From Laetmonice hystrix (lineage: Eukaryota): a stretch of 64,000 bases of DNA. Position 1 is the stretch's first letter. Each line of letters opens with the position of its first letter. A program made the translations under genes and the position numbers. Where the stretch lies: NCBI GenBank assembly GCA_965235115.1, contig OZ249444.1, positions 19,096,001-19,160,000 on the forward strand. The letters run 5' to 3'. Below, piece after piece: positions 388 through 50,919 of the stretch. The notes beneath the pieces are model-generated. The model had not been told where the DNA came from. It saw only the letters and a list, made by a program, of their open reading frames with translations, and searched no databases.

Positions 388-3300
388 ATGGCTGATGACA
401 ACACCACCCCAGAAGGTGAATATATTTTCCAGTAGCACATGATAATCACATAATGAGGTCATTTTAAGGGGGTATTTAATAACCTTCTGGCGCATGCAAG
501 GGTATTTAGCTTTCCCGCGAACAGCAATAATGTCCAGAATCGTAGCATCAAGGACCAGATGATGATGATCATCATGTGTTGTTCTTGTTGATGTTGTTGA
601 CTTTTGTCCTACGTGGTCCTGGCTAGGAATATTATACCAGTCAAATCGTCACACGGCCGAACCGTCACACGGTCAAAGTCAAACCGCCACAGTCATATCG
701 TCACAGTCGGGCGAGTCCCCGGTGGTCAGACCGTCACATCATCACTGCCATTTTTTTAATGCATTTGGAGAGGCCCTTATGTCATGATGGCCATTATTAC
801 ATTATGTATTTTTGGGCCTAGCCAGTCCTAGACCTAGGGAGTCCAGCATAAAGCAAGGTATTCTTTGAAACAGATCATCAGATGTTTATCATTTTGCCTT
901 TTGGAGTAGAGACTAGAGAATTGTGACTTTTTTCTTGTCTATTGTTGTATTGACTTGTACAAGTTTGTAAGTTGTACCGTGGCTGCATGCATTGACGACA
1001 TGTTCCATTGGCATTGTCTTAAATAATAGAGCCTAGGTGTGATCAATTTGGTTATTTTTTGGTTAATATTTCAGATGTATCTCTGGCCCGCAACCGCTCA
1101 CGTCGGGCAAAACCTGATAGAAGTGGGAAGTTTGCAGCACTTGAAAAATTCAAGAAAGCCAAACAGTCAGGGGAAAGATTCAAATATGAAGTAAGTTTAA
1201 ACATTTACTGAATTGTAAATAGATGCTTGAAAACCTCAGATGTGTCTGTGTTGTGGAAATTGTATGCAATTTTGGGACTAAACTAACATTAACCCTAGGC
1301 CTAACCTTAAGTTTACGCGAACCCAAACATATTGTTTCGCGTCAGTAATTAGTCAAATTAATAGATTTATTCTGCCGTCTGACGGCAGAATAACCACTGG
1401 GTAATTTTATAGTGCTCACTGTTTTCTTGGGTTAGGTTGAGCAGGATGACGTATATGAAGAAGTGGATGAGGAAACATACTCTAAGATTGTTCGTGGAAG
1501 ACAAGAAGATGATTGGATTATTGATGACGGTAGTAATTCAATTATTCTGAAAGTCAGGAATTTTTCCCTGAAAGATACATCAAAAGAAAAAACCTTTTGC
1601 TGTGGAAAAGGACGAGTGGCAACTTTTTTTAAAGTATAACTAGACTCTATTTTTGTTTGCTATTATTCTATGATGCAAGGTTTTATAATATAGGCTAAAA
1701 GATCCCCAAAGTAATAAAAGTGTTGCTTTTTGTGTTTTGCTATATTTTGTAATAATTTGCAGATGGAAGTGGTTATGTAGAGGATGGGCGTGAGATCTTT
1801 GATGAAGATGATGGAGAGCTACCTGCAGCAACCAAGGGGAAAAGTGAGAAACAGTTTGTCCAATCGCTGGCATTTCTACATTTATAACCAGCTTTATTGA
1901 ACGAACAGTATGGTAGTGTTGTGCAGGGTAATATCCGAAGATATCTAGTAAGAAACCTAGATTTATGAAACATTCCTTTTGTTTTTATAATATTGTTTCA
2001 TAATTATTTCTGGGATTATTTTCTAGGAAAGAAAGGGCCAGGTGCGACCATAGAACGAAAGAGAATCAAAAACCCTAACATCAGGGCACCAGATTCTAAA
2101 CCTAAAAATATCCGGAGCATGTTTGCTGCTGCTGCAGTCAAGGCCAAACCCAAGGTTGAGGTAAGTGCTGTCTCAAAGCTAGCCTTTTTATGACACAATC
2201 CTGAGTTTCCTTGAAACATTTTTTCATGTGTGTCTTTATTTGGAGCTATTGTATTACAAACTTTGGAATACACATTATAAATCCAACTAAAACAAAATAC
2301 ATGTATAGTAACGACTGTAATCTGATTTTACAGAAGGACGTCAACTTGAATGATGATGCATTGCTCGGTGATATCATGGCAGAGCTACATAATGACTCCT
2401 CCTCCTCTGCTATGCCTGCCCCAATTAAACTAAAGAAAAAAGTTGTCACCAAGTAAGTTAATCAGTGATCAATAAATCAGCAATCATGGTTCGGTATTTA
2501 TTATTTTGGCTGATGTAGCTAACGATGTTCCCTTCAAAATCATAACTGCTTTTGTCTCTTGATTTGGTGTAACAAAGCAAAGTGATGTTCAGTCAGGCAG
2601 CCTTCTTACAGCTGAGTATTTCTGTGGCTGATATGTTCGGGTATGTCAGGTGGGTCCCCTGCAACATAGTGATAGAGCATGTCAAGACAGGTGAACCCTT
2701 GGGAGATCTGTGGTCTTGATGATATGTACATAACAAGATCTGTCATTTAGTTATGTTGTTTTTTTTAGGCCGGCTTTCAACCCATTCAGTACTAAAGTAG
2801 TTCCCAAGAAACCACCAGTAAAGCTGTTGGCTCCTCGCAATTTGAACAACGAGATGACTCCACCACCAATGAAGGCAAGAAAGGTCGTCTTCAAGCCTCC
2901 GCCCAAAACTGCACTCGATAACCTTGACAGTGAGCCCCCAGAGATAGAAACTGAGTCCCCAAAGATGGAATTTTCAGATGAAAACATGACAATTGAAGAT
3001 TTTTCTGAAAATATGGAAGTCCGTAAGTATTTTGGTCTTTTTAATAAAAAAGAAAATTTCTAATACACACTATATTAGTTAAAAGATAGGAGAGATTCAC
3101 TTGGGAGTATTCTGCAGGATCAACAATTTAAAAAAGATTTTGTTGTCAGTTTCTCATTGTTAACTTCCAGCATCAACCAATGGTACAGACCCCAGTGTTA
3201 GTGTTGAAGCTGTTGATGTTAGTGACATTGACTTTGATGAAGACTTTGATGTGGAGGCCAGTGATGCAGCATCAGGGGCAACCAAGGAAGTAGAAAAAAA

Positions 3301-49900: not shown

Positions 49901-50919
49901 ACAACTCGCCTGACCTCAAATTTCACTCCCTCTACAAACTTCAAATTTAGTGTAACACGGCTGACCGCAGGCCGAGTGAGCACCGAGTAAAAGTGGATCA
50001 AAACTTTCAAATAAAGTCGACAGAAACAGGGATGGGAGACACTCTTATAGTACTGCATATACTTGTAGAAATAACTGTCCTGTCATGGCTCCTTCCGTAT
50101 GAATTTAGGCTTAGATAAAGTATCTATAATATATCCGACTTGTATGATGATGATGGCGACGCGCAATTGTAAAATGGAAACACAATCCGCTAAATTTATA
50201 ATGTCCACCTGCTCAACAATAGCATCCACGTTATGCACGTGTGCGCAAGTGGCGCCCTCTATGGCGCAGACGGACTATACACCTGAAATTGATATATGTA
50301 TGTGGCATTAATACCTGTCAGGAAATCCAATGTCATGGATGTATAGAGTGAGCAAGGCCTGGACACATGTCAACAGCAGTGTTTGGTGTTTGACGTGCGT
50401 GCGCTGTGAGTTATGTGTGCTATAGGAGTGGATGCGGTGAGGATGGGGTTACCAAGGGGCCATACCTGCGTCCCTCCCTACCTGATCACCTGGTGTCAAA
50501 GGTCAGCGTTCGTACCATGACCGATCTCATCATATCGACAGAGATATGCTCCGGCCGATCATGTAAAATTGGCTGAAGAATACTACATAACGTTCAGCAA
50601 TGATTTGACGCAAATTTGACTCCATTGACTGTAATATTTGAAGCACCCGTTGAGCTGAAATGCCGAGATGATGAGACTATAAGAAACCTCGTTTGCTTTT
50701 GGTATTAAGTCGGTAGTAATATTAGCAGATAGCCTAATGACCGATCCTGATTTTGTCTCACAGGGAACTTTGGATTGAAATCACAAATCTCAATTTACGA
50801 TTCAATACGACGGCCTGTAGACCTCCTTGCCATATGCAGACTTTGATTTAAAGAAGTATTCAGCCATGGAAGGCTTCACGAACCGAAAAAGTTCAACGCT
50901 TACCGGTAGTTTCAACCAT
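37209..50919 (-). CDS. ARX: Aristaless/Arx paired-class (Q50) homeobox transcription factor with C-terminal OAR domain, 4 coding exons, ~671 aa
   Basis: Spliced homeodomain [34 protein letters not shown]|[15 protein letters not shown]|[26 protein letters not shown] and OAR motif [17 protein letters not shown]. Exons 50919-50904 (putative), 49106-47852, 40074-40029, 37907-37209 total 2016 nt, with an open frame ending in TAG. Confidence 0.95.
40029..40074 (-). CDS. ARX: Arx 46-nt homeobox exon (R)[15 protein letters not shown]
   Basis: Minus strand tttcag|G GAG GAG TTA GCC ATG AGG ATC AAT CTG ACA GAA GCC AGA GTA CAG|gtgggt. Not in the ORF track. Confidence 0.95.
40483..41100. repeat. 54/58-bp minisatellite with internal 16-bp palindrome, ~11 copies, in Arx intron 2
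   Basis: Unit TTTTATTTCTGGTCACATTATACATAGACAAGACAAGGCCTTGTCTATGGGTGG; palindrome AGACAAGGCCTTGTCT. Confidence 0.95.
44435..44519. repeat. (GA)n microsatellite
   Basis: Direct reading. Confidence 0.95.
45521..45626. repeat. 35-bp tandem repeat, 3 copies
   Basis: Unit ACTGTTCGTATTMTCTATAGTTAGCTAATAATTCG. Confidence 0.9.
47405..47558. other. Assembly gap (N run) in Arx intron 2
   Basis: 154 N. Confidence 0.99.
47852..49106 (-). CDS. ARX: Arx large exon 2 (His-rich and acidic N-terminal region plus first part of homeodomain)
   Basis: Lies inside ORF 47821..49161. Acceptor ttctacttcttttgcag| at 49107 and donor ACC AG|GTATGT at 47851. Encodes ...[33 protein letters not shown](R). Confidence 0.93.
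50904..50919 (-). CDS. ARX: Putative Arx first coding exon (ATG GTT GAA ACT ACC G; MVETT-)
   Basis: Minus strand reads gtcaccATGGTTGAAACTACCG|GTAAGC: strong Kozak context, an upstream in-frame TAG, and a phase-1 donor that matches the phase-1 acceptor at 49106. Confidence 0.6.

What the first reader, a model, noticed from the sequence alone, without database searches (positions are those of the whole stretch)
388..50919. Tail-to-tail POLA1-Arx pair in an invertebrate: a possibly pan-bilaterian genomic regulatory block
Seen: POLA1 (+) and Arx (-) converge, with no other gene I can support between them (19748-37209). Known: human ARX lies immediately 3' of POLA1 in the same convergent orientation, and ultraconserved ARX forebrain enhancers sit in the large 3' introns of POLA1 and in the intergenic gap. 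The Arx protein here looks protostome-type: TSFQLEELE and [13 protein letters not shown] resemble Drosophila aristaless as I recall it, rather than the vertebrate TSYQ.../EKAGAQTH. Inference: the linkage may predate the protostome-deuterostome split and be held together by Arx enhancers embedded in the POLA1 'bystander' gene. I cannot tell whether this has been reported for this lineage.
Basis: partly seen in the sequence, partly recalled or inferred. Interest (0 to 1): 0.8.

Follow-up and report, generated by a model that had tools for sequence, protein, structure and literature searches.

The report
Ancient Pcyt1–Pola1–Arx gene neighbourhood
In this (probably annelid) genome the DNA polymerase alpha gene and the brain-patterning homeobox gene Arx lie tail to tail, with a Pcyt1 gene on the far side of the polymerase gene, in the same order and orientation as on the human X chromosome; two other distant annelids share the layout, but many other invertebrates have lost it and no regulatory link was shown.

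Summary
Observation confirmed. POLA1 (+, 388-19748, complete and single copy) and an Arx orthologue (-, stop at 37209) converge across 17.5 kb. That interval holds only tandem arrays, a SINE-like repeat and unique DNA. The N gap at 47405-47558 lies in an Arx intron, beyond the Arx 3' exons, so the adjacency does not depend on it.

Corrections:
- Arx does not start near 50.9 kb. Its large exon has a strong phase-1 acceptor at 49106. The only octapeptide-type exon (SYTIESLIG, phase-1 donor) lies about 0.6 kb beyond the window end.
- A PCYT1 orthologue sits head to head upstream of POLA1. The block is therefore Pcyt1-Pola1-Arx, as in human PCYT1B-POLA1-ARX.

Survey:
- The same convergent pair occurs in Owenia (6.2 kb apart) and Paralvinella (2.5 kb).
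- Accession numbering suggests the two genes lie close together in Haliotis and Sinanodonta.
- They share a chromosome in five spiralian assemblies.
- Arx is not within 10 kb of POLA1 in Capitella, Helobdella, Lottia, Mya, Branchiostoma, Anneissia, Actinia or Ptychodera, and POLA1 is not within 10 kb of Arx in Lingula.

Ancient linkage is supported. "Pan-bilaterian" is overstated. The enhancer-embedding mechanism is untested: no conserved non-coding DNA was found between annelid orders, and the last POLA1 introns are short here. I found no explicit prior report. Verdict: a new member of a known kind, of moderate interest. The scan had not noted this linkage elsewhere.

The parts
388..19748 (+). 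POLA1 (DNA polymerase alpha catalytic subunit), complete gene of about 30 or more exons. First coding exon 388-415; stop TAA at 19746-19748.
   Evidence: tblastn of Anneissia, Paralvinella and Owenia POLA1 gives colinear matches from 1071 to 19745. Pfam PF00136 and PF08996 hit the exons. Start and stop context checked. Single copy in the genome.
7874..8077 (+). POLA1 exon carrying the DFNSLYPS polymerase motif
   Evidence: Pfam DNA_pol_B, E 4.7e-24; 80% identical to Paralvinella.
14260..14292 (+). 33-nt POLA1 micro-exon ([11 protein letters not shown]), which splits the apparent 6.3-kb gap between exons
   Evidence: blastn match to the Actinia locus; AG/GT flanks; the residues match all POLA1 proteins compared.
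15145..15240 (+). POLA1 exon with the YGDTDS catalytic motif
19749..37208 (.). 17.5-kb interval between the POLA1 and Arx stop codons. It holds tandem arrays at 20217-20793, 24162-25044, 28566-30365 and 32425-33291, a high-copy SINE-like element of about 280 bp at 32064-32343, a high-copy element of about 105 bp at 36936-37040, and otherwise apparently unique DNA. No gene was detected.
37209..37907 (-). Arx last exon: end of the homeodomain ([15 protein letters not shown]), [13 protein letters not shown], the OAR motif and the stop codon
   Evidence: Pfam OAR, E 3.2e-8. Alignment over the full exon to Patella, Owenia and Paralvinella Arx, E 1e-37 to 1e-43. Single copy in the genome. Splice context checked.
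40029..40074 (-). Arx 46-nt mini exon ((R)[15 protein letters not shown]), the middle of the homeodomain
   Evidence: The equivalent exon is present in the Haliotis, Owenia and Paralvinella loci.
47405..47558 (.). Assembly gap (N) inside the 7.8-kb Arx intron. No coding sequence is expected in it.
   Evidence: The homeodomain is complete without it.
47852..49106 (-). Arx large exon (about 418 codons), ending with the first half of the homeodomain (…[31 protein letters not shown]). Phase-1 acceptor at 49106.
   Evidence: Pfam Homeodomain. All 120 best database hits are Arx-type. A relative's ORF is colinear over the N-terminal half. Splice sites checked.
49107..64000 (-). Probable Arx intron of about 15.5 kb, holding the second N run (61477-61606) and a 40-bp tandem array (59553-60404). 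It continues past the window end to a candidate octapeptide exon at window-equivalent about 64610-64800 (locus L015, about 610-800).
   Evidence: SYTIESLIG motif and a CAG|GTAAGC donor in phase 1 that matches the acceptor at 49106. This is an inference; no RNA data exist.

Best explanation
The window holds the 3' two-thirds of an ancestral three-gene neighbourhood: Pcyt1 (-), Pola1 (+), Arx (-). It has the same gene order and orientations as human PCYT1B-POLA1-ARX. It was most likely inherited from the protostome-deuterostome ancestor, kept in several annelid lineages and in vertebrates, loosened in some molluscs, and broken in many other lineages.

Shown: gene identities, order, orientation, single-copy status, and the same arrangement in Owenia and Paralvinella.

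Inferred: homology of the arrangement with the vertebrate one, as opposed to re-association by chance.

Inferred and untested: that where it persists it is kept by cis-regulatory interdigitation. In this reading the Arx 3' regulatory landscape occupies the Pola1-Arx interval and, in some species, the last Pola1 introns, so that a break would misregulate Arx or truncate Pola1. I put the ancestral-retention step at about 0.8 and the regulatory-constraint step at about 0.45.
For: Gene identities:
- POLA1.
- Arx: in the homeodomains read out the window differs from vertebrate ARX at four of 60 positions (TSFQ/TSYQ, RINL/RLDL, RKKE/RKRE; the window's middle part is read). All 120 best hits carry QRRYRTTF. 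The best solved structure is Drosophila Aristaless, 61 bits against 50 for ALX4. An OAR motif is present. The last exon aligns over its whole length to spiralian Arx.
- The genome has separate Alx-type and Phox2-type genes elsewhere.
- The upstream gene is a PCYT1 orthologue: CCT-alpha scores 68 bits against 38 for ethanolamine-phosphate cytidylyltransferase, it lies on the - strand, and its exons sit 11.4-13.8 kb before the window.

Same layout elsewhere:
- Owenia: CTP_transf_like (-), POLA1 (+), 6.2 kb, Arx (-).
- Paralvinella: POLA1 (+), 2.5 kb, Arx (-).
- PCYT1-like head to head with POLA1 also in Lottia, Mya and Ptychodera.
- Human order and orientation: PMC8955779 and PMC1964772.

Looser linkage:
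- Haliotis asinina POLA1 and ARX have protein accessions four apart on one chromosome. Both H. rufescens genes lie on one 2.12-Mb contig. In Sinanodonta the locus tags are six apart.
- POLA1 and Arx share a chromosome in Owenia, Mya, Sinanodonta, Littorina and Argopecten.

Placement: the POLA1 tree puts the window with annelids, outside Mollusca.
Against: - Arx is not within 10 kb 3' of POLA1 in Capitella, Helobdella, Lottia, Mya, Branchiostoma floridae, Anneissia or Actinia. Unrelated genes sit there instead.
- The 10 kb after Ptychodera POLA1 holds no called gene and no Arx.
- In Lingula the 3' neighbour of Arx is a condensation-domain gene.
- In Mya the two genes are about 1,600 protein accessions apart.
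- Simple parsimony would therefore allow two gains instead of many losses.
- No non-coding sequence is conserved between the window, Owenia and Paralvinella at blastn sensitivity.
- POLA1 here is compact and its last two introns are 1.5 and 0.24 kb.
- No RNA, chromatin or contact data exist for this organism.
Confidence: 0.6

Rival explanations
1. Neutral inertia. The block is ancestral but is under no special constraint. Slowly rearranging genomes (Owenia, alvinellids, this species, vertebrate X) simply have not yet broken it.
For: - The pair is broken in about eight of the lineages sampled.
- No conserved non-coding elements were detected.
- POLA1 is compact here.
- The head-to-head PCYT1-POLA1 pair is kept even more widely, which shows that the neighbourhood as a whole is slow to change.
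Against: - Retention in three annelid lineages that diverged near the annelid root, and also in vertebrates, is unlikely for an unconstrained pair.
- Irimia et al. 2012 found almost no such pairs after randomising gene order.
- The vertebrate interval is packed with proven ARX enhancers.
- Among the ten species compared, long last POLA1 introns occur only in two of the three with Arx next door: 3.6 + 6.0 kb in Owenia and 9.1 kb in Paralvinella.
Confidence: 0.25
2. Convergence. Pola1 and Arx lie on the same ancestral linkage group and were brought next to each other independently in annelids and in vertebrates by intrachromosomal shuffling.
For: - Both genes share a chromosome in all five chromosome-scale spiralian assemblies checked, without being adjacent in Mya.
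- The pair is absent in amphioxus, a crinoid, and probably a hemichordate.
- Two gains are more parsimonious than six or more losses.
Against: - My estimate, not a tool result: on a chromosome of roughly a thousand genes, the chance of one particular neighbour on the same side of POLA1 and in the same orientation is of the order of 1 in 1,000 per lineage.
- Near-linkage in Haliotis and Sinanodonta fits decay from an ancestral adjacency better than two gains.
- The PCYT1-POLA1-ARX order is the same in both groups.
Confidence: 0.08
3. Another functional coupling of the convergent pair keeps the genes together, rather than enhancers. Examples are shared 3'-end or termination control, or a shared chromatin or replication domain boundary.
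For: The convergent orientation is kept in all species that have the adjacency. The intergenic distance is very short in Paralvinella, 2.5 kb from the end of the gene model.
Against: - The distance between stop codons varies from 6.2 to 17.5 kb.
- In this species the interval is filled with young repeats and minisatellites.
- A ubiquitous replication gene and a tissue-restricted homeobox gene have no expected co-expression.
Confidence: 0.05
4. Assembly artefact: a scaffolding mis-join created the adjacency.
For: There is an N gap at 47405-47558 inside the finding.
Against: - The gap lies beyond the Arx 3' exons as seen from POLA1, so the adjacency does not cross it.
- Both sides of the gap carry complementary, correctly ordered parts of a gene whose last exon is single copy.
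- The same arrangement is found in two independently assembled genomes.
Confidence: 0.01

Closest known systems
Human and mouse PCYT1B-POLA1-ARX locus (Xp21.3-p22.11), with ultraconserved ARX forebrain enhancers (hs119, hs121, hs122, uc467)
   Same: The same three orthologous genes, in the same order and the same relative orientations: Pcyt1 and Pola1 head to head, Pola1 and Arx tail to tail. The non-coding DNA lies 3' of Arx, next to the Pola1 3' end.
   Different: - The scale differs: POLA1 is 19.4 kb here, against about 300 kb in human (the human figure is from my own knowledge).
- There are no long 3' POLA1 introns here.
- No sequence-conserved elements were detected, even between annelid orders.
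- Enhancer function has not been shown here.
Ancient genomic regulatory blocks, or conserved ancestral microsyntenic pairs (Irimia et al. 2012, PMC3514665), e.g. Islet-Scaper and Otx-Ehbp1
   Same: A developmental transcription factor gene sits next to an unrelated housekeeping 'bystander' gene, and the pair is retained between protostomes and vertebrates.
   Different: - The paper's main text does not name POLA1 or ARX, and its supplement was not available to me.
- The pair is not adjacent, within 10 kb, in Lottia or amphioxus, the two slowly evolving genomes named in the text I read. It may therefore have been missed.
- Bystander-intron conservation and enhancers are not shown here.
Arx/aristaless family homeobox genes (Drosophila al, vertebrate ARX, spiralian Arx)
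   Same: A paired-class Q50 homeodomain beginning QRRYRTTF, a C-terminal OAR motif, and homeobox introns at the same positions as in Haliotis, Owenia and Paralvinella.
   Different: - The protein is unusually long: at least 666 codons, against 345-556 in the spiralian Arx proteins found.
- The N-terminal octapeptide exon is only a candidate and lies outside the window.
- A second, divergent Arx-type gene exists on another chromosome.
PRD-class homeobox clusters (hemichordate isl-otp-rax-arx-gsc, PMC4729200; HRO cluster, PMC7566022)
   Same: They involve Arx-family genes in conserved linkage with other genes.
   Different: No other homeobox signature lies between 40 kb before and 80 kb after the window. 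The conserved partners here are non-homeobox genes.

Membership tests
Arx/aristaless homeobox family | Paired-class homeodomain with Q50 and the Arx-type N-terminal arm (QRRYRTTF) | tested here: met
   The complete 60-residue homeodomain is reconstructed from three exons. It differs from vertebrate ARX at four of 60 positions. All 120 best hits share QRRYRTTF. The best solved structure is Aristaless 3a01.
Arx/aristaless homeobox family | C-terminal OAR (aristaless) domain | tested here: met
   Pfam PF03826, E 3.2e-8, 33.5 bits against a cut-off of 20.1.
Arx/aristaless homeobox family | N-terminal octapeptide / eh1-like motif | tested here: inconclusive
   There is none inside the window. A candidate SYTIESLIG exon with a phase-compatible donor lies about 0.6 kb beyond the window end. 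It has no in-frame ATG and there is no RNA support.
Arx/aristaless homeobox family | Orthology rather than paralogy (Alx, Rax, Phox2 and others) | tested here: met
   - Every named vertebrate protein among the best 120 hits is ARX or unnamed; none is called ALX or RAX.
- The genome has separate Alx-type (C11) and Phox2-type (C4) genes and a more divergent second Arx-type gene (C12).
- The last exon aligns end to end with spiralian Arx.
- No rooted family tree with outgroups was built.
DNA polymerase alpha catalytic subunit (POLA1) | Family B polymerase domain with DxxSLYPS and YGDTDS, plus the C-terminal Pol-alpha zinc-finger domain | tested here: met
   PF00136 hits four exons (E 1e-13 to 5e-24). 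PF08996 hits two exons at or just under its cut-off. Both motifs are read directly.
DNA polymerase alpha catalytic subunit (POLA1) | Full-length colinearity with known POLA1 and single copy in the genome | tested here: met
   26-30 colinear matches cover residues 4 to about 1485 of reference proteins. There is one genomic match. The tree places it among spiralian POLA1.
Genomic regulatory block (GRB) | A developmental regulator next to an unrelated bystander gene, with synteny kept over long evolutionary distance | tested here: met
   Annelids (three lineages) and vertebrates share the arrangement. It is broken in many other lineages.
Genomic regulatory block (GRB) | Conserved non-coding elements spanning the bystander and the intergenic DNA | tested here: inconclusive
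   blastn (word size 9, E 0.01) of the window plus flanks against the Owenia and Paralvinella loci found only exons. These species are too distant for a fair test, and no close relative's locus could be fetched.
Genomic regulatory block (GRB) | Long bystander introns that hold enhancers of the target gene | tested here: not met
   In this species the last two POLA1 introns are 1.5 and 0.24 kb, and the only long gap between exons (8.8-15.1 kb) is split by a micro-exon. Owenia and Paralvinella do have long last introns. Enhancer activity cannot be tested with these tools.
Genomic regulatory block (GRB) | Physical contact or regulatory dependence between the target promoter and elements in the bystander | not testable with these tools
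   No RNA, ATAC or Hi-C data were reachable.
Conserved ancestral microsyntenic pair sensu Irimia 2012 | [quoted passage not shown] | tested here: inconclusive
   Two lineages are clear (annelids, vertebrates). Haliotis probably qualifies (accessions four apart). Sinanodonta has about five intervening locus tags. Distances in the other lineages are unknown beyond 10 kb.

The most novel reading that the evidence does not exclude
The 3' regulatory landscape of Arx has been interleaved with the terminal exons of Pola1 since before the protostome-deuterostome split. That would make Pcyt1-Pola1-Arx one of the oldest regulatory blocks underlying a human disease locus. In annelids the distance from the Pola1 zinc-finger exon to the Arx stop codon is similar (15.9, 18.0 and 19.4 kb), while the last two small Pola1 exons sit at different places within it. 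This is what one would expect if that span is Arx regulatory DNA in which the Pola1 exons are merely lodged.
Probability: 0.25. Interest if true: 0.65.

Novelty: new member of a known kind. Interest (0 to 1): 0.45.

Why it matters
ARX is a major X-linked gene for intellectual disability and epilepsy. Its ultraconserved enhancers next to and inside POLA1 are textbook cases of extreme non-coding conservation. If the same neighbourhood, now including PCYT1, goes back to the bilaterian ancestor and survives in experimentally tractable annelids such as Owenia, two questions become testable in a locus one-tenth the size. Did the vertebrate enhancer landscape grow out of an older one? Is regulatory interdigitation what holds a housekeeping gene and a developmental gene together? 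The patchy pattern of retention also offers natural 'separation experiments' in Capitella, leeches, limpets, clams and amphioxus. If the linkage is only inertia, the finding is one more entry in a list of several hundred ancient neighbour pairs.

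Tried and rejected
Rejected. Its GT sites are weak and in phase 0 or 2, whereas the strong acceptor of the large exon at 49106 needs phase 1.
- A gene between POLA1 and Arx. None found: Rfam gave 0 hits, there are no tRNAs, the ten longest non-repeat ORFs have no Pfam domain, and the long ORFs are tandem-repeat translations.
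- The unnamed genes 3' of POLA1 in Lottia (440 aa), Helobdella (449 aa), Capitella (138 aa) and Actinia (236 aa). They are not homologous to each other or to anything in the window. They are therefore not a hidden conserved third gene, and not divergent Arx genes.
- An apparent conserved non-coding hit with Actinia at 14243-14310. It turned out to be a POLA1 micro-exon.
- Conserved non-coding elements against Haliotis, Owenia and Paralvinella. None found.
- Other homeobox genes near Arx (a PRD cluster). None between -40 and +144 kb in window coordinates.
- RNA evidence. No RNA runs exist for this organism.
- Alignment A1, which included all window exon fragments. It was badly scattered by MAFFT and was replaced by A2.
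- Literature. No paper in the library combines POLA1, ARX and synteny or microsynteny, or names the pair. The supplements of PMC3514665 and PMC7530604 are not held, so earlier listing in a table cannot be excluded.
- Whether contigs of close relatives (P0002, P0003) carry the block.

Full report
**What is in the window**

On the + strand, colinear protein matches to full-length DNA polymerase alpha catalytic subunits run from 1071 to 19745. The references were from a crinoid, a leech, a sea anemone, Paralvinella and Owenia. Pfam finds DNA_pol_B on four exons and the Pol-alpha zinc finger on two. The DFNSLYPS and YGDTDS motifs are read directly. The stop TAA is at 19746-19748. A 33-nt micro-exon at 14260-14292 splits what looks like a 6.3-kb intron. 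It first appeared as a nucleotide match to the sea anemone locus. POLA1 is single copy in the 627-Mb assembly.

On the - strand there are three exons with canonical splice sites: 47852-49106, 40029-40074 and 37209-37907. They join into one open frame of 666 codons with a single terminal stop. This frame holds a complete paired-class homeodomain split over all three exons, and an OAR motif (Pfam E 3.2e-8).

**The assembly gap**

The N run at 47405-47558 lies in the 7.8-kb intron between the homeobox exon and the 46-nt mini exon. No residue of the homeodomain is missing. The Haliotis, Owenia and Paralvinella genes have the same three-exon split. The Arx mini exon and last exon lie on the POLA1 side of the gap, so the adjacency does not cross it. 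The last exon is single copy and the homeobox exon has one perfect match in the genome, in the right order and orientation. This speaks for a correct join.

**The interval between the genes (19749-37208)**

- No Rfam family and no tRNA.
- No Pfam domain in the ten longest non-repeat ORFs.
- The large ORFs in the mechanical list are translations of tandem arrays of 29, 63, 36, 72 and 25 bp.
- A 280-bp element at 32064-32343 has thousands of copies at 93-98% identity.
- A 105-bp high-copy element sits 170 bp past the Arx stop.
- Most of 20.8-28.5 kb looks unique.

**Correction at the Arx 5' end**

The large exon has a strong acceptor, a pyrimidine tract followed by CAG, at 49106 in phase 1.

Spiralian Arx proteins begin with a motif of the form …SYDI(D/E/A)SL(L/I)G. 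The only such motif upstream on the - strand is SYTIESLIG, at window-equivalent about 64.7 kb, just outside the window. It is followed by a CAG|GTAAGC donor in phase 1, which matches the acceptor. That exon has no in-frame ATG, so at least one further exon may exist. No RNA run exists for this organism, so this stays an inference. If it is right, Arx spans at least 27.6 kb and its promoter lies beyond the window.

The next recognisable gene upstream is a galactose-3-O-sulfotransferase, about 39 kb further on. No other homeobox signature lies between 40 kb before and 80 kb after the window.

**Is it Arx?**

- In the homeodomains read out, the window differs from vertebrate ARX at four of 60 positions (TSFQ/TSYQ, RINL/RLDL, RKKE/RKRE). 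The window's middle part is read.
- All 120 best database hits share the QRRYRTTF arm.
- Every named vertebrate hit is ARX.
- The best solved structure is Drosophila Aristaless, at 61 bits against 50 for human ALX4.
- The last exon aligns end to end with Patella, Owenia and Paralvinella Arx. The alignment includes shared motifs outside the homeodomain and the C-terminal …NGIVY.
- The genome also carries an Alx-type gene (C11), a Phox2-type gene (C4) and a second, more divergent Arx-type gene on C12 that lacks the first homeobox intron.

The window gene is the conservative orthologue. I built no rooted tree with outgroups.

TSFQ occurs in bivalves, some annelid fragments and insects, but most gastropods have TSYQ. 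[12 protein letters not shown] is shared with a whitefly and with Paralvinella.

**The organism**

A POLA1 tree places the window with Paralvinella and Capitella (support 82/74), outside a well-supported Mollusca. This agrees with earlier notes of the scan that this genome is probably an annelid.

**A third conserved neighbour**

A gene on the - strand lies 11.4-13.8 kb before the window start. It is a choline-phosphate cytidylyltransferase (PCYT1) orthologue: Pfam CTP_transf_like, and rat CCT-alpha at 68 bits against 38 for the ethanolamine enzyme. It is head to head with POLA1. The local order is therefore Pcyt1 (-), Pola1 (+), Arx (-).

The human order PCYT1B, POLA1, ARX is documented in PMC8955779. 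There, a 41-kb duplication takes the terminal POLA1 exon plus all of ARX, and the enhancers lie downstream of ARX, between ARX and POLA1. PMC1964772 places uc467 in the last POLA1 intron, next to ARX.

**Survey of other species**

These results come from gene-centred loci with 10-kb flanks.

Same tail-to-tail pair:
- Owenia fusiformis: CTP_transf_like (-), POLA1 (+), 6.2 kb, Arx (-).
- Paralvinella palmiformis: POLA1 (+), then Arx (-) 2.5 kb after the gene model, which is 8.5 kb after the last coding exon.

PCYT1-like head to head with POLA1 but no Arx within 10 kb:
- Lottia, where a 440-aa gene and an epimerase gene follow.
- Mya, where a B-box gene follows.
- Ptychodera, where the 10 kb are empty.

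No Arx within 10 kb 3' of POLA1:
- Capitella, Helobdella, Branchiostoma floridae (a TLD gene follows), Anneissia (an oxidoreductase gene follows) and Actinia.
- The intervening genes are unrelated to each other.

From the Arx side, POLA1 is not within 10 kb 3' of Arx in Lingula or Haliotis rufescens.

Looser evidence:
- POLA1 and Arx lie on contigs of identical length, meaning the same chromosome, in Owenia, Mya, Sinanodonta, Littorina and Argopecten.
- In Haliotis asinina the two RefSeq proteins are four accession numbers apart. In H. cracherodii they are 14 apart. In H. rufescens both genes are on one 2.12-Mb contig.
- In Sinanodonta the locus tags are six apart.
- In Mya the genes are about 1,600 accessions apart.
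- Reading accession order as gene order is my inference.

**Reading of the survey**

The arrangement was present in the annelid ancestor, because Owenia branches at the annelid root. It was lost in Capitella and in leeches. The near-linkage in abalones and a freshwater mussel fits decay from an adjacency in the spiralian ancestor. Identity of order and orientation with vertebrates then points to the protostome-deuterostome ancestor.

The alternative is two independent gains on the same ancestral chromosome. By my own rough estimate this needs an event of the order of 1 in 1,000 twice. Simple parsimony, with many losses, does not exclude it. Amphioxus, the crinoid and probably the hemichordate lack the adjacency.

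I put ancestral retention at about 0.8.

**Mechanism**

Functional enhancer data support it in vertebrates. Here it is untested.

Against it:
- No non-coding conservation between the window, Owenia and Paralvinella. These are very distant species, so the test is weak.
- POLA1 is compact, with last introns of 1.5 and 0.24 kb.

Weakly for it:
- In Owenia and Paralvinella the last POLA1 introns are long (3.6 + 6.0 kb; 9.1 + 0.3 kb). In the seven species without Arx next door they are 0.05-2 kb.
- The span from the POLA1 zinc-finger exon to the Arx stop is similar in the three annelids (19.4, 15.9 and 18.0 kb), although the last two POLA1 exons sit at different places within it. With three species this is an anecdote.

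I put the regulatory-constraint step at about 0.45. Neutral inertia is the main rival.

**Novelty**

No paper in the searchable library links POLA1 and ARX with synteny outside clinical or vertebrate enhancer work. The main text of the key microsynteny papers does not name the pair, and their supplements were not available.

The pair is not adjacent, within 10 kb, in Lottia or amphioxus. Those are the two slowly evolving genomes named in the part of the 2012 survey that I read. Nor is it adjacent in Capitella or Helobdella. A survey that leaned on those genomes may therefore have missed it. That screen allowed up to four intervening genes, so I cannot be sure.

It is best filed as a new, or at least not explicitly described, member of the known class of ancient microsyntenic, GRB-like blocks. 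Its added interest is that the vertebrate counterpart is a well-studied disease locus.

Noticed in passing
window 14260-14292 (+): A 33-nt POLA1 micro-exon ([11 protein letters not shown]) inside the apparent 6.3-kb gap between exons. With its flanks it is 79% identical over 72 nt to the sea anemone Actinia locus, which also has a very long intron (7.4 kb, with two nested EF-hand genes) just before it.
   Followed up: yes
G000:C12:18775786-18775908 (-) (locus L025): A second Arx-type homeobox gene ([46 protein letters not shown]), 78% identical to the window gene over 41 residues. It lacks the intron after the first half of the homeobox. It may be a lineage-specific paralogue or a retrogene-derived copy.
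   Followed up: partly
window 32064-32343, next to 32425-33291: A SINE-like element of about 280 bp with thousands of genomic copies at 93-98% identity lies directly beside a GC-rich 25-bp minisatellite (35 copies, GC 0.61). This may be a composite SINE-plus-satellite insertion.
   Followed up: partly
window 36936-37040: A high-copy element of about 105 bp (about 1,800 first-look candidates, 93-98% identity) lies 170 bp past the Arx stop codon, probably within the Arx 3' UTR.
   Followed up: no
window 28566-30365; 20217-20793; 24162-24859; 40483-41105; 59553-60404: Five long, very homogeneous minisatellites (72 bp x 25 at 98% identity; 29 bp x 20; 63 bp x 11; 58 bp x 11; 40 bp x 21). Three lie in the POLA1-Arx interval and two in Arx introns. 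They produce long spurious ORFs of up to 534 aa.
   Followed up: partly
window 352-359: An E2F-like site (TTCCCGCC) lies about 30 bp upstream of the POLA1 ATG, as one would expect for an S-phase replication gene promoter. I recognised this from memory of the consensus and did not test it.
   Followed up: no
L009 24514-25392 (Owenia); L005 31507-36107 (Actinia): Unrelated genes are nested in POLA1 introns in other species: a Methyltransf_21 gene in Owenia and two EF-hand genes in Actinia.
   Followed up: no
L013 (G000:C10:19082200-19084600), L007, L009, L024, L028: The head-to-head PCYT1-POLA1 pair is conserved more widely than POLA1-Arx: in this genome, Owenia, Lottia, Mya, the hemichordate Ptychodera and human. 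In Helobdella a CTP_transf_like gene lies 10 kb downstream of POLA1 instead.
   Followed up: partly
window-equivalent 103866-105227 (-) (L018/L019): The first recognisable gene upstream of Arx is an intron-poor galactose-3-O-sulfotransferase (Pfam E 3e-37). Arx therefore sits alone in about 84 kb between the POLA1 stop codon and this gene.
   Followed up: partly
window 61477-61606: A second N run, not mentioned in the finding, lies in the probable first long Arx intron.
   Followed up: no
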